Virus record (IMG/VR): IMGVR_UViG_3300050821_013430 | Location: 372,001-436,000 of that record | Length of the DNA stretch: 64,000 nt | Strand: one strand, 5' to 3' | Shown: in pieces, positions 1 to 60,410 of the stretch | How the letters are laid out: each line of letters opens with the position of its first letter | Position numbering within the stretch: the first letter of the stretch is position 1 | Program-made: the position numbers and the translations under genes | Notes under the pieces: model-generated | Told to the model about the DNA's origin: nothing | Databases searched by the model: none | What the model saw: the letters and a program-made list of their open reading frames with translations, nothing else

Positions 1-389
1 GCCCAAAACGAAACCGATGGCAATCCCACCCCATATCGCAGACCAGAACGCCACCTTTCTTGTCGAACGCCAGAACGGCGACCAATCCTTCTTCGGCTTG
101 GGGGCGGGCGGTTCTTCGGGGATATCCATTGCAGCGGGCTCCCTATAACTCGTCGTTGCTTCCACTTCGCCGGAACCGTTGCAATCGAGACACTTTTGCT
201 TACTCATGATTACACCTTCCCTTTCTTCCAACAGGCATTCCGAAACTCGGTCTCATCGAACTTTGGGTTGTCCCTGAACAGATCGACGAAGGCGTTGATG
301 ACATCCAACTTATGAACGCCGCAGCAAGCAGGCCCAATGATGTTGGCAATCTTGATGGCCTTGTCAAAGTCCTTTTGGCTGCTCATCGG

Positions 390-752
390 TCATTGCCCTT
401 TCAGAACGGCATCGACGCGCACCAACGCTCGTTCATCATCAGCCTTGTCGTTCTCTACATCCAAAGAGCCGTGGAAAACGATGCAGTCTCGGGCAACGAC
501 CAAAGCATCGCGCATTCTTTCAGTCTTCTCCTGCTCGTTATCCAAGGCATTGACCAATTCGACGGTATGTCCATCCGCAGCAACTTGCAACAGACGCACC
601 TTCTCTCGCAGTTTCAGTATCTCCCGAGCCATCTCGTGGCCCTCATAGGGGCCAAAGACTTCGGCCAACTCGACGAGTCGGTCTTCGGATACACCTTTCA
701 TTGTCTCGCTCCTTACTTGCTTGCCTTCATCAGAATCGGAACCAATCGACAA
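390..752 (-). CDS. hypothetical protein (coiled-coil)
   Basis: ORF in minus-strand tiling with SD-like upstream sequence. Confidence 0.55.
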   Translation of the reverse strand: MSIGSDSDEGKQVRSETMKGVSEDRLVELAEVFGPYEGHEMAREILKLREKVRLLQVAADGHTVELVNALDNEQEKTERMRDALVVARDCIVFHGSLDVENDKADDERALVRVDAVLKGQ

Positions 753-991
753 GTCAGTTTATGATCCTCGAATGTCTTAGGGTAGGAGAGAAATTCTCGA
801 CAATCTGGGCAGAAACCAGACAACTCCCCGTAATACCCAACCTCAAAGGAGAGGTAGAGTTTGACCAGCATCTCGATGGTCTGCTCCGGGGTGAGCGAAG
901 GTAGGCCGGTCGGGTGTTCTAACTTGCAGTTTGGCCGAAAGAACCAATGCCCAGATTCTTCCTGTCTGCATCCTTCGGGATGAGTGTTCAT
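713..991 (-). CDS. hypothetical protein, CxxC motif
   Basis: Start reset to MNTHP (GGAG-like SD upstream); CPDC motif. Confidence 0.45.
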   Translation of the reverse strand: MNTHPEGCRQEESGHWFFRPNCKLEHPTGLPSLTPEQTIEMLVKLYLSFEVGYYGELSGFCPDCREFLSYPKTFEDHKLTCRLVPILMKASK

Positions 992-1007
992 TGTCTTGCT
1001 CCTCGGG

Positions 1008-1262
1008 TTAGGGTCGGTAGTTGAAAGTGATAGACATCCCGGTGGTGTTGGGCTCGGTGCAGATATACACCTTCGACTTCCAGGGATAACAGCAGCGGAT
1101 GAATTTGCAGGACAAGGATTGGTCAGGCGTTTGGTAGATGCCCTTCTCGTAGTCGAAGGTACCCGCACACCCGCACATGCTCAACAACACCAATAGACCG
1201 ATATACCTCACCCAATAATGCGGGGCTATTCCTTGCGGACGTGTAGAAGCATCCGACACCAT
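1008..1262 (-). CDS. putative lipoprotein/membrane protein
   Basis: Hydrophobic stretch followed by MCGC lipobox-like motif. Confidence 0.45.
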   Translation of the reverse strand: MVSDASTRPQGIAPHYWVRYIGLLVLLSMCGCAGTFDYEKGIYQTPDQSLSCKFIRCCYPWKSKVYICTEPNTTGMSITFNYRP

Positions 1263-1264
1263 TG

Positions 1265-1400
1265 GTGATATACTCTCCGAATGGTTTTAGCCGTTCGAGA
1301 TTGTGCCATCAACGCTGAGAGCCTGCTTGCCACGCTTGCGCGTGGGCTTCGCAGGTCTTACCTCAACTCCGACAAGGGTTGATATCCCAACCCCGTTCTT
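1265..1400 (-). ncRNA. putative omegaRNA scaffold of TnpB
   Basis: Structured 3' end overlapping the tnpB C-terminus; terminal hairpin TCGAACGG/CCATTCGG then TCAC end; 5' boundary approximate. Confidence 0.55.
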
Positions 1401-2522
1401 GCTTTTCAGCAAGGACATACCTTGTGTATGAATGTTGATCGCGGCATTCGCATCACGATCGTGATGCGTGCCGCAGTTTGAGCAATCCCATTCTCGATCT
1501 TTTAGGTCGAGAGTCTCATTGATATGCTGGCAGCAAGAACAAGTCTTGCTGCTCGGATAGAAACGATCAATGAAGATCACCTTTGAGCCATACTTGCTGG
1601 CCATATAGACCAGTTTCTGAACGAAGGAGTAGAGGCCTAAGTCTCCAATCTTGCGACTACATAAGGCTTGCATCCCTTTCAGGTTGAGGGTCTCTAAGCA
1701 AATTGTCTCGTAGGTTTGCACCAATTGGTAAGCCAACTGCCAGTGAAAGTCTTTTCGTTGGTTGGCGATGTCGTCATGAGCCTTGGCAAGCGCACGAAGT
1801 GCGCGCTTGCTATTCCCACTACCCTTGACCTTACTATCTAACTGCTGATTGAGTCTCCTGATCTTCTTGCTGCTTTGCTTGAAGAACAAGGGAGATTGGA
1901 TCGCTGTACCATCACTTCCTGTCAGGAAGTTTTTGAGCCCGAAGTCGAAACCGACGCTTTTACCCGATCTGGTTTCTTGTTTGGACGCTTCCTGAAAGTC
2001 TGTGGTGATGTAGATGAACCATTCTCCTAATGAGTTCTTTTTGACGGTGAGGGTTTTGATCTTACCCTCCCAGTCTCGGTGCTTGTGAAACCGAAATGTC
2101 TTTCCTCCTCGGCCGTGATAACTTTGTCCGCTGATGTAGAGCGTGTTGTCATCGAGTAGTTTGTAGCCAGTATCTTGCCTGAATGTGATGCTCCGATACT
2201 TGGGCGTCTTCTTGAATTTAGGAGGAGAGGTTTTTACGCCACGTCTCAGATCGTCAAAGAAGTGATCATAGCCGATGTATATACGGTCAACAATCTGACG
2301 AGTGGCTGTAGCATTGATCATCTGCCAGGCAGAATTAGGCTCGTTTCGCCTATCTCGCACCAGCCCATACATGTCGTAGAGACTGATGTAGGTCTTATCC
2401 CGAGAATATGCTTCCCGCTTGGTCAAAAGAACCCAATTGTAGATGTCGCAAGCCACCGTGAGCAAGGCGTCCAAATAGCGGGTTTTGCGAGTGGTATAGA
2501 GTTTGTAGGCGTAGGTCTTCAT
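1287..2522 (-). CDS. tnpB: RNA-guided endonuclease TnpB (IS200/IS605 family)
   Basis: RuvC-I GFDFG, RuvC-II ETL, zinc finger PSSKTCSCC...CSNC, RuvC-III DRDANAAINI; catalytic D/E/D intact. Confidence 0.95.
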   Translation of the reverse strand: MKTYAYKLYTTRKTRYLDALLTVACDIYNWVLLTKREAYSRDKTYISLYDMYGLVRDRRNEPNSAWQMINATATRQIVDRIYIGYDHFFDDLRRGVKTSPPKFKKTPKYRSITFRQDTGYKLLDDNTLYISGQSYHGRGGKTFRFHKHRDWEGKIKTLTVKKNSLGEWFIYITTDFQEASKQETRSGKSVGFDFGLKNFLTGSDGTAIQSPLFFKQSSKKIRRLNQQLDSKVKGSGNSKRALRALAKAHDDIANQRKDFHWQLAYQLVQTYETICLETLNLKGMQALCSRKIGDLGLYSFVQKLVYMASKYGSKVIFIDRFYPSSKTCSCCQHINETLDLKDREWDCSNCGTHHDRDANAAINIHTQGMSLLKSKNGVGISTLVGVEVRPAKPTRKRGKQALSVDGTISNG

Positions 2523-2530
2523 CTCACCAT

Positions 2531-2559
2531 ATCGTAATCCTCTGAGAGATGGTTGTCAA
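2531..2559 (-). promoter_or_regulatory. sigma70-type promoter for tnpB
   Basis: TTGACA-17 bp-TACGAT, 8 nt before the ATG. Confidence 0.7.
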
Positions 2560-2960
2560 GTGATCTTCTTTGGAAGGTGTAGGTGCATACGACACCAATT
2601 GCAGTATACGCACACCTCTTCCGTTCCCTTCGTATGACATTGCACACCCACTTTCTTGAACGGACAGGTCTTGTCGTTCAGGTCGTGCGATAGAGAGTGA
2701 TGCACGCACTCCTGCACCATCTTGCGTTCCAATTCATTCCGTTCCTCAATCAATCGATTGATGCGACCATCCAGACGAATGAGTTGCAAGAGGTAATCGG
2801 GGAAGGGATCGATGGCGTCTTGCGGTTTAGGAGTAGGTATTGGATTGAGGGTGGTATCGGGCAATCGAATGTCTCCCACCTCTTCGAGAGAGCATCCCAG
2901 TAAAGAGGCTAATCCTTCCCAATTGACCGTTGCGGCCGTGTATCTATCACCACTGCTCAT
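2556..2960 (-). CDS. hypothetical protein with C-terminal Cys/His cluster
   Basis: ORF in tiling; coiled-coil followed by C..C..C..C. Confidence 0.6.
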   Translation of the reverse strand: MSSGDRYTAATVNWEGLASLLGCSLEEVGDIRLPDTTLNPIPTPKPQDAIDPFPDYLLQLIRLDGRINRLIEERNELERKMVQECVHHSLSHDLNDKTCPFKKVGVQCHTKGTEEVCVYCNWCRMHLHLPKKIT

Positions 2961-2963
2961 TGG

Positions 2964-3209
2964 TCATCCTCCTTCGTATTCATGGACACACTCAGATGAG
3001 GCTGATTTCGGATTGCTTGGATGCAACCCGCACTTGACACAGAGTTTGGCATCCCGCTTCTTGGGTGCTTCTTTGGCTACTACCTTCTCGGCCTCGGGGT
3101 ATTCATGAGCAAAGCCATATTGGCATCCTTTTCCAGGGTTTAGACACCAGGGACGCTTGTCGCTTTCGGGTCGAATGCAGAAGAGGCAGAGACGATCGCT
3201 CATTGGCAT
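2964..3209 (-). CDS. Cys-rich zinc-finger-like protein
   Basis: CLFC...C...C and CVKC...H motifs; start reset to MPMSD. Confidence 0.5.
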   Translation of the reverse strand: MPMSDRLCLFCIRPESDKRPWCLNPGKGCQYGFAHEYPEAEKVVAKEAPKKRDAKLCVKCGLHPSNPKSASSECVHEYEGG

Positions 3210-3225
3210 AACCTCGTATGAGTGT

Positions 3226-3612
3226 ATGAGTTCAGACTTGCTACTTGCTTTAGCGGAACACTTTGAGGCCCTCGCTATCGGCACCGTACATGACCTTGGC
3301 AAACGAAGACTACTTACCACCGTCCTCGAAGCCATTCGTTTGCGGAAAGACCCTTGGGAGCATACCAGCGCTCTCTTGAAAGGGGTAGATCGGAAGCAGG
3401 TTTCGGATGCCCTCTTCTACCTGTTCGAGTACGGGGAGATCACCTACAATCGGGAACACGGATATGCCTTAGTCCCGAAGTCCCAACAACCCAAACTCTC
3501 TCCTGAGAGCATCCGCCCCATTGAGAGAGATGTCGCCAAACAAGACAGGATCGCTCTGCAAAACCAGAGGCTATGGGACGCCATCCTGAATGCCAAGAAG
3601 CCTCAGCGATAG
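3226..3612 (+). CDS. putative winged-helix protein
   Basis: VDRKQVSDALFYLFEYGEITYNREHGYAL resembles a wHTH recognition helix plus wing; fills a gap in the minus-strand tiling. Confidence 0.4.
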   Translation: MSSDLLLALAEHFEALAIGTVHDLGKRRLLTTVLEAIRLRKDPWEHTSALLKGVDRKQVSDALFYLFEYGEITYNREHGYALVPKSQQPKLSPESIRPIERDVAKQDRIALQNQRLWDAILNAKKPQR

Positions 3613-3754
3613 ACCGAGGACAAGAGCACCAATTCCCAGGCGATGATGATAGCCGATATCCAAACGGCCCTCTCATAACCCATCTCCTTTCGATAGGCAT
3701 AGAAGGCGTAGATCAGAACGAGGATGGAAGCGCCACCAACCAGTAATGGCATCA

Positions 3755-4285
3755 TCATCGGTAAACGCCCATCTTCAATTGCGCCCGCATCTCTTCCGGT
3801 ATCTCCTGACCATTGCCCATGGCCAGTCTTTCGCAGTAAGCGCGGAAACTGTCGCCATCCACCCTGATATACTCACTTGTTCGTGAGACCGTAATGCTAT
3901 TACGAGTGCATAACTCGATGAACAGGGTAGCCATCTTCTCGAAGTAGCGATTACTTGCCACACCGAAGTCAGCACCACCAACGAGCCAATGATCCGCCTC
4001 TGGTAGGCTGCCGATGTACTTGAAGGCTGCTTTCATCGAACGCTCAATGTCCAACCTCTCCTCCGCAAACCTCTTGACTAATGGCTTGGCGCATTCCTTG
4101 AACAACTCCTCATAGTCAATCGGCTCCGGTGATGGAAGAAGTTTGGTAGTGATGACGGAGTGATCTCCTTCTTGATAGGGAGGGAGTTCGGGCGACTTCT
4201 TCTTCCGAGGAAACACGCCCATCCACCATCCCATCCCCGCAAAACCAATGAACAACAGCAGCGATAGCGTTATCACCATAGTCAT
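3755..4285 (-). CDS. membrane-anchored hypothetical protein
   Basis: N-terminal TM helix followed by a basic stop-transfer RKKK. Confidence 0.6.
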   Translation of the reverse strand: MTMVITLSLLLFIGFAGMGWWMGVFPRKKKSPELPPYQEGDHSVITTKLLPSPEPIDYEELFKECAKPLVKRFAEERLDIERSMKAAFKYIGSLPEADHWLVGGADFGVASNRYFEKMATLFIELCTRNSITVSRTSEYIRVDGDSFRAYCERLAMGNGQEIPEEMRAQLKMGVYR

Positions 4286-4650
4286 TCTCCCTTCAACCAA
4301 TTGAGTGCTCGTGCGAAGAAGCCAGGCTTCTTTGGCATCCTTCGTTGTTCGTCCATATCCTGATGGACATAGTAGAGACAATCGCCTTGGTCAGAGTTGA
4401 TGATCATTCCGCCATCATCCATCGCATAGACCTCGGCCTCGGCATACCCATACACCTTGACTTGATCATTGGCGAGGGCTTTGGCTTCCTCTTCGGAGAA
4501 TGCCGTTTGGATATGACTCAGGCCAGAGCCTGGTGGAATCGCCTTCACCGCATAGCGCATAGTCTTCTTCGACGCCTCGTAGTCCGCTGCCTCCGCACGC
4601 AGCATCGCCTGAAACTGCTCCTCATTGTCTTTCTCATCGTCTTGGTTCAT
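4282..4650 (-). CDS. hypothetical protein
   Basis: ATGA-coupled to neighbours. Confidence 0.55.
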   Translation of the reverse strand: MNQDDEKDNEEQFQAMLRAEAADYEASKKTMRYAVKAIPPGSGLSHIQTAFSEEEAKALANDQVKVYGYAEAEVYAMDDGGMIINSDQGDCLYYVHQDMDEQRRMPKKPGFFARALNWLKGE

Positions 4651-4976
4651 CGGACTTCCTCCTTCGGTATATGCCCGCCTGCCGCTTCCCAATAAGTGAA
4701 GCGTGTGGCCTCCCAAGAGAGAAGGGATCGATACCCATCATCCTTCAACATCCGTATCTTGCCGCAAAAGGCGCAGCGCCACACCGTTCCCTCATACAAG
4801 GGACGGAAGGTGATCCAATTCCAAAACCGATACCAGAGTCCGGGTGGTTCGCACTTATGCGGTTTGATCGGAGGCGGAGGTTTGCGGGCTCGGATGATCC
4901 CTCCGACTTTCAGAGGCACCACTTCGGTCTTGGCGAGAGTGTCCGGAATGCGATAGGGCTGAATCTCGTTGCTCAT
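4647..4976 (-). CDS. zinc-binding paralog family A protein
   Basis: PYR...HKC.PP...WRCxxC...W...GG pattern shared with 16946 and 22253. Confidence 0.6.
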   Translation of the reverse strand: MSNEIQPYRIPDTLAKTEVVPLKVGGIIRARKPPPPIKPHKCEPPGLWYRFWNWITFRPLYEGTVWRCAFCGKIRMLKDDGYRSLLSWEATRFTYWEAAGGHIPKEEVR

Positions 4977-5194
4977 TGCCGTTTTCCTCCCACCATAGTC
5001 AGTATATTGGCCACTACCGCTGTTCCTACAACGGTTTCCAACAACGCCTCTATACACTTCAAGTCGTTTGGACGCACTCCCTTCTTTCGGAGGGCTTTCA
5101 GGATACCGGCCTTGGCCTCCAATATCTCCTTGCCAGTTCTAAACACGGCCAATTGACGACGCTTCTTTCCCGTTCTCTTCGATGCCCTCTTCAT
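4973..5194 (-). CDS. basic hypothetical protein
   Basis: ATGA-coupled ORF. Confidence 0.45.
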   Translation of the reverse strand: MKRASKRTGKKRRQLAVFRTGKEILEAKAGILKALRKKGVRPNDLKCIEALLETVVGTAVVANILTMVGGKRQ

Positions 5195-5417
5195 TATCCT
5201 TCACCATACCCTTGGGTTGCCATAGGCTACCGTGTCAGTCTTCTTCCCACATTGTCCGCAGAGGTAGTGCTTGCCCCACTGAGAGGTGTAGGTCTTCCAA
5301 TAGTGGTCGCACCATAATCGTCGCCACAGAGAACACAGCCATTGGATCATATCTCACTCCTCCTATACGCCCTCAGGAAGCGTTTTGCCCTCAGGATGAC
5401 CCGAGAGACGTACCTAA

Positions 5418-5813
5418 TCAGTCCGAATTGATGGCGGGCTCATTAGGAGCGTCCGCACCCTCTTCCTCATCCTCGTCCCGCCCCGAGCGTTCGCGTTGCT
5501 CCTTCGTCCAATTCTCCCAATTGAAACTCTCATCATTGCCTCGGCGCGTATTGCAGAACCAATGGCTAATCGAGAGGTTATCCATCTCATCACTGCCACC
5601 CTTCGAGAGTGGGGTTTTGTGCTCGATTGTGGCAGCAGAGGGATTGACGTGTCTTTTGCAGACGAAACAGGGAACAATCCCGTCGTTTTGCTTGCTTAGG
5701 TACTTGTAGAGAGTTTCGCGACGGGAGGCGAGTTTTTCTCGTCGTAAGCGGGCGAGGGCTTTCTTGCTGGGCTTTCTCATGTCGAGGTCTATATCCCGCC
5801 GAATCAGGATCAA
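5418..5813 (-). CDS. HNH endonuclease
   Basis: CFVC...ATIEHKTPLSKGGSDEMDNLSISHWFCN: HNH signature. Confidence 0.85.
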   Translation of the reverse strand: MILIRRDIDLDMRKPSKKALARLRREKLASRRETLYKYLSKQNDGIVPCFVCKRHVNPSAATIEHKTPLSKGGSDEMDNLSISHWFCNTRRGNDESFNWENWTKEQRERSGRDEDEEEGADAPNEPAINSD

Positions 5814-6201
5814 TCCTTTTGATTGACCGACCCCTTGACACCTAATTCCGCAGATACCAGATCTGAGATGTCCTCACAAGTAGATCTTAGTCAGAAGTAG
5901 AGATGTAAGAGAGTGAGATCAGGGGCGGGTCTTCTTCTTGTCGGATAGGTAGACTACTATGTTCGCCACCACCGACCCCAGGAACATCAGGAAACCAACA
6001 CCAATCAGTATTAGAGGGACTAACATTGACTTGTTCCTTCCAATTGACGGTCATACCATCCACATATCCAAACCACGAACGCAGAGTAGAGCATCGCTGC
6101 TACTCCTGCTATCACCGTGTATTGCCACACATTCACTGTTGAGTAGAGAATGAACAGCACGCAGATCACTCTCACCCAACGGTGTAGGGAAGTGTAATGC
6201 T

Positions 6202-23950: not shown

Positions 23951-24026
23951 TGGTGCGCCAGGCCAGATTTGAACTGGCAACTCTTCGCTTAGAAGGCGAA
24001 GTTTCTATCCGTTGAATTACTGGCGC
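23951..24026 (-). tRNA. tRNA-Arg(UCU)
   Basis: Acceptor GCGCCAG/CTGGCGC, anticodon arm TTCGC-CTTCTAA-GCGAA, T-loop TTCAAAT, encoded CCA. Confidence 0.92.
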
Positions 24027-42640: not shown

Positions 42641-42718
42641 TGGCGTCCCCATCCGGGCTCGAACCGGAACCAACAGATTGAAAGTCTGTCCGCCTAACCA
42701 GTTAGCAGATATGGGGAC
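42641..42718 (-). tRNA. tRNA-Glu(UUC)
   Basis: Acceptor GTCCCCA/TGGGGAC, G discriminator, ACAGA-CTTTCAA-TCTGT, T-loop TTCGAGC, CCA; slightly long D-arm. Confidence 0.88.
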
Positions 42719-56098: not shown

Positions 56099-57220
56099 AT
56101 GCAGCGAACAGTTTCCGTCCCAGTCAATGTCCCAACAGGCTTTCTTGATTACTTGAAGACCTGCTCGGTCATCTTCAATAGGCATATCGATTGGGCCTTC
56201 GAGAACTATACCTACAACAAGATCAAGGCCCACCAAGCCCTCTACTACCCTATTCGGGCAGAGTTCCCAGAGATACCTTCCTCGGTCTTGCAGGCTATCC
56301 GAGATACTGCTGTGGAGGCTGTAAAAGCCATCGACTTCAAGTTCAAGCCCACCAAGAAGCCCCATTCAGCAGTTAGATACAATGCTCGAACCATATCTCT
56401 TCGTGGCAATTTGCTCTCGTTCTCTTGGTCGGGCGATAGGATCAAGCAGTTAATCAAACTGCCTACTTTCTTCACCAATCGCTATAAGGACTGGAAGTTC
56501 CAATCAGCCACCATCGGCTATGACAAGCGGAAAGCCCAAGTCAGAGCCAACCTTACTTTTACTTACCCCACTCCTCCTATCGTTCAGACTGACAACTCTG
56601 ATCGAATAGTTGGGGCAGATCGAGGCTTGCACAACATCATCTCGCTGTCGGATGGTACTCTGTTCAATGCCTCTCGTGTTCGAGCCCAGAAACGCAAGTT
56701 CCTGTATGTAAAACGACAGCTCCAAGCAAAAGGCACTCGATCATCAAAGCGTCTCCTCAAAAAGAGATCAGGTCGAGAAATGCGGTTCAGCTCGGATGTC
56801 AATCATTGTCTATCCAAGAAGTTGGTCAATCTTCCGTATGATGTGTTCGTCCTCGAAAACCTTGCGGGTATCCGTAAACGAAACAAGGGTCGAAAACTCA
56901 ACGGCTGGCTGTCTAACTGGACATTCTTTCAGTTAGAGCAGTTCATCGGGTACAAGACAGAAGCACTTGGCAAGCAAGTAGTCAAGGTGGATGCCCGCTA
57001 TACCAGTCAGAAATGCTCAGACTGTGGGAATACAGACAAAGCAAGTAGGAAGGGCTCTCGATACTTATGCGTTGAATGTGGGCATGCGGAGCATGCCGAT
57101 ATCAACGCCGCTAAGAATATCAAGGCCAACTACACTCTCTCCTTGGCTGCAAAGAACAAGGAGCAGGCTCTCGTCAATGAGCCAAATGCCTCGGTCGCAA
57201 GATCAGAGGCAAGTTATTAG
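56099..57220 (+). CDS. tnpB: RNA-guided endonuclease TnpB
   Basis: VGADRG, LENL, YTSQKCSDC...CVEC, ADINAAKNI; catalytic D/E/D intact. Confidence 0.95.
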   Translation: MQRTVSVPVNVPTGFLDYLKTCSVIFNRHIDWAFENYTYNKIKAHQALYYPIRAEFPEIPSSVLQAIRDTAVEAVKAIDFKFKPTKKPHSAVRYNARTISLRGNLLSFSWSGDRIKQLIKLPTFFTNRYKDWKFQSATIGYDKRKAQVRANLTFTYPTPPIVQTDNSDRIVGADRGLHNIISLSDGTLFNASRVRAQKRKFLYVKRQLQAKGTRSSKRLLKKRSGREMRFSSDVNHCLSKKLVNLPYDVFVLENLAGIRKRNKGRKLNGWLSNWTFFQLEQFIGYKTEALGKQVVKVDARYTSQKCSDCGNTDKASRKGSRYLCVECGHAEHADINAAKNIKANYTLSLAAKNKEQALVNEPNASVARSEASY

Positions 57221-57266: not shown

Positions 57267-57911
57267 TTAGGCGAAGAGAGAGCAAGTATCAAAATCATCC
57301 AATTGATTAGGAAGTTGTTCGACATCTAAGAGTCGTTGAAATCGAAGAGGACAATCCAATGGATCATAACTGAAATTACGACTCCGTATTCCTCTTTGCA
57401 TTTTACGAGGAGTGATCTCGATAACCGACTCTTTTCGCGATACAAAATTGATAGCCCTATACTCTTTCTTTTCTTTCACCAGAATGGCATTCTCATAGAA
57501 AACTGGTATCTCAGAGTATTGGGCTTTTTTCAGATCGAGATCAAAAGATTTGGAACTATAACGATATGCGACGCAACTACCGCAGGTACGATGAAAATTG
57601 ATGGCATTGATGGCTTGACTTTTCTTACGAAAGGATTGAAACTTCTCTAAATCAACGCTACTTTGCGACTCGGAGAAATAAGGAGACAAGTAAAAGTCAT
57701 TCGAGGTCAAATCGTAATGTACTTCTATTTGGAAATCAGTTCGACGAGAACTCATCGGATAACCGGTAATAGAAAATGTTCCAATGGCACGCTCGGCCTC
57801 AAGAGCCACTAGTTGAGGTGTCCAAGTATTGAGAGTCAATTCTAACACCAATGTCCCACTACAAAGGGGACAGTTAGTTCGATAATCGAGAAAGTTTTGT
57901 AGAGTAGTCAT
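57267..57911 (-). CDS. hypothetical protein with CxxC pairs
   Basis: CPLC...CGSC. Confidence 0.6.
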   Translation of the reverse strand: MTTLQNFLDYRTNCPLCSGTLVLELTLNTWTPQLVALEAERAIGTFSITGYPMSSRRTDFQIEVHYDLTSNDFYLSPYFSESQSSVDLEKFQSFRKKSQAINAINFHRTCGSCVAYRYSSKSFDLDLKKAQYSEIPVFYENAILVKEKKEYRAINFVSRKESVIEITPRKMQRGIRSRNFSYDPLDCPLRFQRLLDVEQLPNQLDDFDTCSLFA

Positions 57912-59843: not shown

Positions 59844-60410
59844 ATGGAAACACCAACATATAAATTTGCTCTCAGAAAAGATTTAGAAGGGGAGGAAAAG
59901 ATCGAATTTTTACCTACCCGTGCCGAACCAAAGGCCAGCGGCTGGGATGTGAGAGCCGCTCAGGAAGATCGAAAACCAGTCATATTGAAACCATTCGAGC
60001 ATACTAAAATCCAATTAGGATTTCGTGCTTTTTGCCCAGAAAATTATTGGTATGAATTGAAACCACGCTCCTCTTCTTTCGCTAAAAAGAATTTGCACTG
60101 TTTATATGGTACAATTGATGAGACCTATGAAAATGAATTAGTACTAGCGGTACAATACATTCCTTTCTTCGAGTTGGAATCCGATGTCGATGTTGAGTAT
60201 GGTTATTACGGCGATAGTCGTACAACTGTTGGAATTAGAGTGGTTGCTCCCGATTTGGTAATCAATTTCGGCGATGCCATCGGACAAATCGTACCGGTCA
60301 AACGACAGGAAATGCAGGCGGAACAAATCACCAATGCAGATTATGATGCGCTGTGCAAGGAGCGGGGTGGAGTACGTGGGGAAGGCGGATTCGGGAGCAC
60401 CGGAAAATGA
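59844..60410 (+). CDS. dut: trimeric dUTPase
   Basis: SGWDV, PRSS, GTIDETY, AIGQ and RGEGGFGSTG motifs I-V. Confidence 0.93.
   Translation: METPTYKFALRKDLEGEEKIEFLPTRAEPKASGWDVRAAQEDRKPVILKPFEHTKIQLGFRAFCPENYWYELKPRSSSFAKKNLHCLYGTIDETYENELVLAVQYIPFFELESDVDVEYGYYGDSRTTVGIRVVAPDLVINFGDAIGQIVPVKRQEMQAEQITNADYDALCKERGGVRGEGGFGSTGK

What the first reader, a model, noticed from the sequence alone, without database searches (positions are those of the whole stretch)
1265..2559. Minimal TnpB element whose target motif supplies its own -35 box
Seen: the left end is only 32 nt (2523-2554), with no obvious TnpA hairpin. The flanking TTGAC plus the first element base forms TTGACA, 17 bp from TACGAT inside the element, with the ATG 8 nt later (leaderless-like). 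Deleting 1265-2554 gives ...ACT TGA CCA ATG GTG..., the same TGA-CCA-ATG junction found natively at 2958-2966, which supports these boundaries and a TTGAC TAM. The predicted guide is CAATGGTGTCGGATGCTTCT. Established: TnpB cuts element-free alleles next to the TAM. Inference: tnpB is transcribed only once inserted at its TAM, and spreads by homing between co-infecting phages.
Basis: partly seen in the sequence, partly recalled or inferred. Interest (0 to 1): 0.6.

Follow-up and report, generated by a model that had tools for sequence, protein, structure and literature searches.

The report
Phage TnpB gene with minimal promoter
A 473-kb soil phage carries an intact RNA-guided nuclease gene (TnpB) with its guide RNA but no transposase, expressed from a very compact promoter; this is an ordinary kind of element, and the idea that its DNA target motif doubles as part of that promoter is possible but not shown.

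Summary
The sequence facts hold. Window 1287-2522 (-) encodes an intact 411-aa TnpB. A conserved omegaRNA scaffold ends at 1265, a right boundary fixed by about 40 independent relatives. TTGACA-17-TACGAT lies 8 nt before the ATG, and no left-end hairpin is present. The 473-kb phage encodes no TnpA, so peel-and-paste transposition is excluded.

Three related elements in other phage-like contigs have the same arrangement: TTGAC, then a -10 hexamer 16-17 nt on, then the ATG (8 nt on in two of them, 20 in L007). However:
- The same leaderless promoter type drives at least four other genes of this phage.
- In related TnpB elements it lies inside a longer left end.
- Hairpin-bearing relatives are flanked by TTAC, not TTGAC.
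- TAM-contact positions do not separate the two groups.

So TTGAC is clearly a -35 box; whether it is also the target-supplied TAM is unproven. No empty site was found in any collection, for this element or its relatives. "Transcribed only once inserted" is doubtful, because the gene is co-oriented with upstream genes and no terminator lies between them. TnpA-independent homing is plausible and already described in the literature. Verdict: a new member of a known kind.

The parts
1287..2522 (-). tnpB coding sequence, 411 aa, intact
   Evidence: ORF list. Pfam OrfB_IS605 and Cas12f1-like TNB. D193, E277, D357 and C328/C331/C347/C350 are invariant among 20 relatives. Aligns to solved ISDra2 TnpB over residues 2-369, E 1.3e-33.
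1265..1400 (-). predicted omegaRNA scaffold, overlapping the 3' end of tnpB and ending at the right end of the element
   Evidence: In a 20-sequence alignment, 13 of 20 consensus pairs show compensatory changes. The long-range pair 1382-1386 with 1267-1271 covaries in this element. The single-sequence fold gives z -3.59. No Rfam family covers it.
1274..1300 (-). right-end subterminal hairpin with a one-base bulge, followed by the terminal GTATATCAC (1273-1265)
   Evidence: Homologous to the hairpin plus AGTATGTCAA terminus of about 40 relatives. The same bulged stem is present in L007 and e2.
1245..1264 (-). predicted guide segment (flanking DNA after the right end; includes the start codon of the next gene)
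   Evidence: Follows from the right boundary at 1265. Unique in the genome. The ten 16-mer matches in IMG/VR are chance hits with no TTGAC or TTAC in front.
2523..2554 (-).
   Evidence: Read directly. DNA fold z 0.22. The left boundary is inferred, not demonstrated.
   Evidence: Promoter scan, 10 of 12. TTGAC sits at the same position in L007, L008 and L253. It matches this phage's own promoter class.
2531..2536 (-). -10 box TACGAT, 17 nt after the -35 box and 8 nt before the ATG
   Evidence: L008 and L253 have the same 8-nt distance to the ATG.
2556..2960 (-). upstream phage ORF (134 aa, orphan); its TGA stop lies inside TTGAC and is in frame with tnpB
   Evidence: Its only database match is itself, on 3 contigs.
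1008..1262 (-). downstream phage ORF (84 aa, lipoprotein-like N-terminus); its ATG lies 2 nt after the right end
   Evidence: Called as a gene in L006.

Best explanation
This is an intact tnpB-plus-omegaRNA gene with no transposase. It belongs to the IS608-like branch of IS200/IS605 (IS1341 type) and to a clade found so far only on phage-like contigs.

Anatomy:
- The right end is canonical. It has a subterminal hairpin, a terminal motif and a scaffold ending at 1265. The next roughly 16-20 nt of phage DNA serve as the guide.
- The left end is reduced to a complete compact sigma-70-type promoter (TTGACA, 17 nt, TACGAT) with the ATG 8 nt after the -10 box. The mRNA is therefore probably leaderless.
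- By the published behaviour of TnpB, that mRNA is probably also the omegaRNA precursor.
- The promoter is of the same type that this phage uses for several other genes. TTGAC is therefore first of all a -35 box of the gene's own promoter.

Consequences:
- With no TnpA in the genome and no left-end hairpin, the element cannot move by peel-and-paste.
- It can persist by vertical inheritance. If a suitable TAM precedes the target in element-free genomes, it could also persist by TnpB cutting of those genomes followed by recombinational copying (homing).

Shown here: the gene, catalytic residues, RNA covariation, right boundary, promoter geometry, absence of TnpA and of a left-end hairpin.
Inferred: leaderless transcription, nuclease activity, homing.
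For: - TnpB domains and invariant RuvC and zinc-finger residues.
- Right boundary from about 40 independent relatives.
- 13 of 20 scaffold pairs have compensatory changes.
- No Y1 TnpA or serine recombinase in a record rated 100% complete.
- No left-end hairpin.
- Promoter scores 10 of 12 and is the best in 6 kb.
- Other genes of the same genome show the same geometry of C-TTGACA, N16/17, TAnnnT, 6-8 nt, ATG. They are a dUTPase-like gene, a GIY-YIG/NUMOD3 endonuclease and two orphans; one shares the context ATCACTTGACA.
- Compact promoter-plus-start geometry occurs in 22 of 165 non-redundant TnpB loci. It is internal to the left end in L256, L036 and L135.
- The 11 closest relatives (49-66% identity) form a 100/100 clade of phage-like metagenomic contigs. 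The best hit among 185,579 species genomes is 43%.
- TnpB processing its own mRNA into omegaRNA is published (PMC10278001, abstract).
Against: - All four short-left-end elements have a perfect TTGAC exactly where similarity to each other begins. This is also what a target-supplied TAM would give.
- In this element, deleting 1265-2554 leaves a tidy stop, 3 nt, start junction.
- No transcription data exist; no RNA run holds the locus.
- Activity of the nuclease is untested.
- The enrichment of leaderless promoter sites in the genome is modest.
Confidence: 0.6

Rival explanations
1. TTGAC is the transposon-adjacent motif and belongs to the target, not the element. The element brings only the A, the spacer and the -10 box, so a working promoter exists only after insertion next to the TAM. 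The element spreads by TnpB cutting of TTGAC-plus-target in co-infecting element-free phages, followed by recombination.
For: - TTGAC lies at the edge of shared sequence in e1, L007, L008 and L253, with a -10 hexamer 16-17 nt on.
- Left-end spacers are unrelated between e1, L007 and L008, which suggests selection on the hexamers only.
- The stop codon of the upstream ORF lies inside TTGAC, and the reconstructed junction looks like a normal gene junction.
- The right-end terminus (TCAC, TCAT or TCAA) differs from TTGAC, as self-avoidance requires (same logic in PMC11043419).
- TGAC is one base from the family motif TTAC, and TAM flexibility is documented for another TnpB.
- TnpA-independent homing into plasmids or phages is discussed in PMC13565253.
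Against: - Hairpin-bearing relatives of the same clade are flanked by TTAC with T at -3 in all five.
- L253 groups with TTAC-type elements (99/96 support), yet its left end is 28 nt identical to that of L008. This points to exchange of a promoter module.
- No residue in WED/REC distinguishes TTGAC-type from TTAC-type proteins. The position equivalent to ISDra2 K76, which reads G at -3, is T in both e1 and TTAC-type L012.
- The sister pair e2/L011 has no TTGAC.
- C at -1 and -3 before TTGAC is shared by all four elements. C at -1 (10 of 12) and, less often, at -3 (7 of 12) also precedes this phage's other promoters, so the conserved unit extends into the supposed flank.
- Read-through from upstream genes is not blocked.
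- No empty site was found anywhere.
Confidence: 0.27
2. A stranded remnant. A canonical IS605/IS608-type insertion lost its left end (TTAC, linker, hairpin) by deletion down to the internal promoter. It now persists only by vertical inheritance, with no role for the nuclease.
For: - Canonical relatives carry an internal promoter with the same 17-nt and 8-nt geometry downstream of the hairpin (L256).
- L007's tnpB has a frameshift near codon 30.
- The element is fixed in every contig that holds the locus.
Against: - The ORF is intact and all catalytic and zinc residues are kept.
- Scaffold pairs, including the terminal long-range pair, covary in this very copy.
- The short-left-end design recurs in four elements at different sites, which would need repeated similar truncations.
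- The clade has persisted in phage-like contigs down to 49% identity.
Confidence: 0.1
3. A domesticated weapon. The phage keeps the nuclease to cut competing related phages at the locus (marker exclusion), rather than as a selfish homing element.
For: - It uses the same promoter type as ordinary phage genes.
- The phage holds four diverse TnpB-like genes plus HNH and GIY-YIG endonucleases.
- Killing of competitors by homing nucleases is described for phages (PMC13565253).
Against: - The mechanism is indistinguishable from homing with the data at hand.
- No related phage carrying the target was found.
Confidence: 0.08

Closest known systems
IS608 / IS605 group of the IS200/IS605 family
   Same: - Same TnpB family.
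- The right end has a subterminal hairpin about 10 nt from a terminus of the ...GTATGTCAA type.
- Closest hairpin-bearing relatives (L012, L256, L257, L258) show TTAC, then about 18-19 nt, then a hairpin at the left end. Some also carry a Y1 TnpA. TTAC as the IS608 target is stated in PMC13565253; the spacing rules are from my own knowledge of IS608.
   Different: - No tnpA.
- No left-end hairpin.
- The flank reads TTGAC, not TTAC.
- The right terminus is TCAC, not TCAA.
IS1341-type (tnpB-only) elements
   Same: Encodes only TnpB with its omegaRNA. It depends on others, or on homing, for any mobility (group definition in PMC13565253).
   Different: The left end is reduced to a 32-nt promoter segment. 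It lives in a jumbo phage, within a clade seen only on phage-like contigs.
ISDra2 TnpB-omegaRNA (TTGAT TAM), solved structures 8bf8/8exa/8h1j
   Same: Same domain order, RuvC triad and zinc finger. The scaffold is derived from the gene's 3' end plus the right end, with the guide at the 3' end. TTGAC differs from TTGAT only at the last base.
   Different: Most of ISDra2's TAM-contact residues are not conserved at the aligned positions here (e.g. K76 aligns with A71 or T72); only Q80 is plausibly kept as Q76 after a one-residue shift. The TAM cannot be read off by homology.
Free-standing homing endonuclease genes of phages (Seg/Mob of T4) and 'transposon non-restorative homing'
   Same: A nuclease gene sits between conserved phage genes and could cut genomes lacking it and be copied in during co-infection (PMC13565253). 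A GIY-YIG/NUMOD3 gene in the same phage uses the same promoter type.
   Different: The target is recognised by RNA. No polymorphic or empty site has been observed, so homing is not demonstrated.
TldR (nuclease-dead TnpB-like repressors)
   Same: A TnpB relative with an adjacent guide RNA, near promoter motifs.
   Different: The catalytic residues are intact here, so it is not a TldR.

Membership tests
IS200/IS605 family, TnpB (OMEGA nuclease) | OrfB_IS605 RuvC-like domain plus zinc-ribbon TNB domain | tested here: met
   Pfam E 1.6e-21 and 7.1e-23, both above the curated cut-offs.
IS200/IS605 family, TnpB (OMEGA nuclease) | Complete RuvC D-E-D triad and CxxC...CxxC zinc finger | tested here: met
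   D193, E277, D357, C328, C331, C347 and C350 are invariant in 20 relatives. They align with the ISDra2 motifs.
IS200/IS605 family, TnpB (OMEGA nuclease) | omegaRNA scaffold overlapping the 3' end of tnpB and ending at the right end | tested here: met
   Conserved consensus structure with 13 of 20 pairs showing compensatory changes. Expression was not testable because no RNA run holds the locus.
IS200/IS605 family, transposable unit | Right-end subterminal hairpin and conserved terminal motif | tested here: met
IS200/IS605 family, transposable unit | Left-end subterminal hairpin similar to the right-end one | tested here: not met
   DNA fold z 0.22 for this element against -3.7 for canonical L256.
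IS200/IS605 family, transposable unit | Y1 (HUH) TnpA in cis or in the same genome | tested here: not met
   No PF01797 and no PF00239 match in the 472,749-bp record; the control genomes were positive. The host genome is unknown.
IS200/IS605 family, transposable unit | Conserved target/TAM motif immediately 5' of the left end | tested here: inconclusive
   TTGAC is present in all four short-left-end elements. It coincides with the -35 box, differs from the clade's TTAC, and is absent from the sister pair e2/L011.
Homing element | Presence/absence polymorphism with precise boundaries at a homologous site | tested here: not met
   All contigs with the flanking genes carry the element. Junction patterns are absent from the viral and metagenome collections and from two soil runs. 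The same holds for L007, L008 and L253.
Homing element | Nuclease cuts the element-free allele | not testable with these tools
   Needs a cleavage or interference assay.
Sigma-70-type leaderless promoter | -35 and -10 hexamers at 16-18 nt, with the start codon within about 10 nt of the -10 box | tested here: met
   The same design is seen at four other genes of the genome.
Sigma-70-type leaderless promoter | Mapped transcription start at or next to the ATG | not testable with these tools
   No RNA data.

The most novel reading that the evidence does not exclude
In a phage-resident lineage of TnpB elements, the left end has been pared down until the transposon-adjacent motif itself serves as the -35 box. 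The nuclease and its guide RNA are then made from a promoter that is completed by the target site. The element spreads between co-infecting phages purely by RNA-guided homing, with no transposase.
Probability: 0.25. Interest if true: 0.65.

Novelty: new member of a known kind. Interest (0 to 1): 0.4.

Why it matters
If TTGAC proved to be both TAM and -35 box, it would be a neat case of a mobile element whose expression is wired to its own target motif. It would also be a natural example of a TnpB element that lives by homing alone in phages.

As the evidence stands, the locus adds the following:
- A well-delimited TnpB/omegaRNA pair from a phage-restricted clade, with a defined guide.
- Evidence that such genes adopt the phage's own leaderless promoter type.
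- A concrete, cheap test system (a TAM screen plus a promoter fusion).

It does not yet change what is known about TnpB biology.

Tried and rejected
Empty-site searches (all negative):
- The upstream 134-aa protein has no relative among 5.8 billion proteins apart from itself, and none in viral contigs.
- The exact junction pattern is absent from viral contigs, and a gapped version is absent from metagenome contigs.
- Two soil runs, held only as contigs, show only occupied junctions and no joints.
- Gapped junction patterns for L007, L008 and L253 are absent from viral contigs.
- Every contig with the flanking proteins of L008 and L253 carries the TnpB.
- The guide 16-mer gives only chance hits in viral contigs.

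Other lines tried:
- INPHARED blastn of window 1-5000: no match.
- Rfam: no omegaRNA family, only chance hits.
- Specificity-determining residues between the TTGAC and TTAC groups: none in WED/REC.
- A shared left terminus between e1 and its paralogue e2 (TTGACAACCATC against TTGA-AACCATC): not significant, p about 0.08.
- 'Same native junction' argument: TGACCAATG occurs 7 times against 3.6 expected.
- A supposed HNH presence/absence difference between the window and L006 was only a gene-calling difference; the two are 100% identical over 11.2 kb.
- Searching the L008 record for further copies of its promoter module failed because the record is not held.

Considered and rejected:
- TldR, because the catalytic residues are intact.
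- IS607 type, because there is no serine recombinase and the ends are IS608-like.

Full report
WHAT IS THERE

The window is bases 372,001-436,000 of a 472,749-bp virus record rated 100% complete. On the minus strand, 1287-2522 is a 411-aa ORF with Pfam OrfB_IS605 and Cas12f1-like TNB domains.
- In an alignment with 19 relatives, the RuvC residues D193, E277 and D357 and the four zinc-finger cysteines are invariant.
- The protein aligns over residues 2-369 with the solved ISDra2 TnpB, E 1.3e-33.

The gene lies between two small co-oriented phage ORFs: 2556-2960 (134 aa) and 1008-1262 (84 aa). Neither has a Pfam match. The same 11.2 kb occurs, 100% identical, in a second sample.

RIGHT END AND GUIDE RNA

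About 40 independent relatives from viral and metagenomic contigs end with a hairpin followed by ...GAGTATGTCAA. After that motif their flanks differ.

A 20-sequence alignment of the last 170 nt gives a consensus structure in which 13 of 20 pairs show compensatory changes. A long-range pair between the terminal GTATATC and an upstream GATATC covaries in this copy. The single sequence folds better than all 200 shuffles, z -3.59. Rfam has no model for this RNA.

The guide is therefore the flank from 1264 downwards. It is unique in the genome.

LEFT END AND PROMOTER

TTGACA (2559-2554), a 17-nt spacer, TACGAT (2536-2531), 8 nt, then the ATG is exactly as described. It is the best sigma-70-like site in window 1-6000, at 10 of 12.
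- The 32 nt form no hairpin (z 0.22), unlike the left end of a canonical relative (z -3.7).
- The phage genome encodes no Y1 TnpA and no serine recombinase.
- By the established mechanism of IS608-type transposition, which needs both hairpins and TnpA, this copy cannot transpose.

RELATIVES

The 11 closest TnpBs (49-66% identity) come from the phage's own genome and from phage-like metagenomic contigs. They form a 100/100 clade. The best match among 185,579 species genomes is 43%.

Within the clade:
- L012 and L258 carry a Y1 TnpA.
- L012, L256, L257 and L258 show TTAC, about 18-19 nt, then a hairpin at the left end, which is IS608 geometry.
- Four elements have a short, hairpin-less left end: this one, L007, L008 and L253. 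All four have TTGAC followed 16-17 nt later by a -10-like hexamer (TACGAT, TACAAT, TATATT, TATATT).
- This one, L008 and L253 each have exactly 8 nt from the -10 box to the ATG.
- The spacers of this element, L007 and L008 are unrelated, so the hexamers look selected.

WHY THE TAM CLAIM REMAINS OPEN

1. The short-left-end type is not one lineage. L253 groups with the TTAC-type L012 and L257 (99/96 support). Yet it shares 28 identical bases, from TTGAC to TATATT, with L008, whose protein is only 58% identical. That looks like exchange of a promoter module.

2. No residue in the TAM-binding WED/REC region separates TTGAC-type from TTAC-type proteins. By the HMMER alignment shifted one residue to match the conserved tryptophan, the position matching ISDra2 K76, which reads G at -3 (PMC10097598), is T in both this protein and TTAC-type L012.

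3. The sister pair of this element (the paralogue e2 and L011) shares a different left end with no TTGAC and no conserved flank motif.

4. The promoter is not peculiar to the element. At least four other genes of this phage have C-TTGACA, 16-17 nt, TAnnnT, 6-7 nt, ATG:
   - a dUTPase-like gene (window 59844-60410);
   - an orphan (window 57267-57911);
   - a 107-aa orphan whose promoter context ATCACTTGACA is identical to this one;
   - a GIY-YIG/NUMOD3 endonuclease.
   The C at -1, shared by all four short-left-end elements, precedes 10 of 12 of this phage's TTGACA promoters (C at -3 in 7 of 12). The conserved unit therefore reaches into the supposed flank.

5. Compact promoter-plus-start geometry occurs in 22 of 165 non-redundant TnpB loci. 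In L256, L036 and L135 it lies inside a longer, hairpin-bearing left end.

- A perfect TTGAC in all four elements.
- A right terminus (TCAC, TCAT or TCAA) that differs from it, as self-avoidance requires (same logic in PMC11043419).
- The tidy stop, 3 nt, start junction left by deleting 1265-2554. That 9-mer, however, occurs 7 times in the genome against 3.6 expected.

EMPTY SITES

None was found.
- The upstream protein exists only on contigs that carry the element.
- Junction patterns are absent from the viral and metagenome collections.
- Two soil runs, held only as contigs, show only occupied junctions.
- The relatives L007, L008 and L253 are also always occupied.

The left boundary, the TAM and homing therefore all stay inferred.

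TRANSCRIPTION ONLY AFTER INSERTION

This is doubtful. The gene is co-oriented with the upstream genes, and no terminator-like site lies between them on the minus strand. Read-through transcripts are therefore expected. What the promoter adds is a leaderless start for an ATG that lacks a well-placed ribosome-binding site. By published work, such a transcript would also be one that TnpB can process into omegaRNA (PMC10278001). No RNA data exist for the locus.

HOMING

With no TnpA and no left-end hairpin, RNA-guided cutting of element-free genomes followed by recombination is the only route of spread left. TnpA-independent 'non-restorative homing' into homologous chromosomes, phages or plasmids is already set out in the literature (PMC13565253). 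It is a reasonable inference, but neither demonstrated nor new in concept.

VERDICT

- Best reading (about 0.6): an intact, phage-resident, TnpA-independent TnpB/omegaRNA gene whose left end is a complete phage-type leaderless promoter.
- Novelty: a new member of a known kind.

Noticed in passing
window 56099-57220 (+): A second, distant TnpB-like gene (373 aa; Pfam TNB 5.1e-22, OrfB_IS605 3.1e-06; about 30% identical to the first). The genome holds four TnpB-like genes in all, the others at genome 311.9 kb (66% identical paralogue) and 149.3 kb (34%).
   Followed up: partly
window 57947 (-35 start, minus strand; gene 57267-57911) and window 59809 (plus strand; gene 59844-60410): Two divergent genes, an orphan and a dUTPase-like protein. 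Both have C-TTGACA, 17 nt, TAnnnT, 6-7 nt, ATG. They belong to a leaderless promoter class of this phage that also drives a GIY-YIG/NUMOD3 homing endonuclease at genome 276272-277246.
   Followed up: partly
window 5418-5813 (-): An HNH endonuclease gene (Pfam HNH 4.8e-09) lies 3 kb upstream of tnpB.
   Followed up: no
window 23954-24026 (-) and 42646-42716 (-): Two tRNA genes found by Rfam.
   Followed up: no
window 2556-2558 and 2520-2522 (-): The TGA stop of the upstream 134-aa ORF is in frame with the tnpB ATG, 11 sense codons apart. Read-through would give a fusion protein. This is probably chance, at one in three.
   Followed up: no
window 1245-1264 (-) compared with L008:4092-4111: The predicted guides of this element and of L008 (53% identical TnpB, unrelated flanking proteins) share 13 of 20 bases (17 of 30), then nothing. 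Pairs that similar make up 0.13% of 5,356 flank pairs. This is unexplained.
   Followed up: partly
L008:2863-2890 and L253:1465-1492: Two TnpB genes in one 39.7-kb phage-like contig are 58% identical as proteins and sit in different subclades. They nevertheless share 28 identical bases from TTGAC to the -10 box.
   Followed up: yes
L007:4934-5001: The closest foreign relative (63% identical) has a frameshift near codon 30 of tnpB. It also has a CCTCCC-TTGAC-GGGAGG hairpin straddling the putative left boundary.
   Followed up: partly
whole genome (G000): TTGAC is twice as frequent on the plus strand (848) as on the minus strand (440). The cause was not examined.
   Followed up: no
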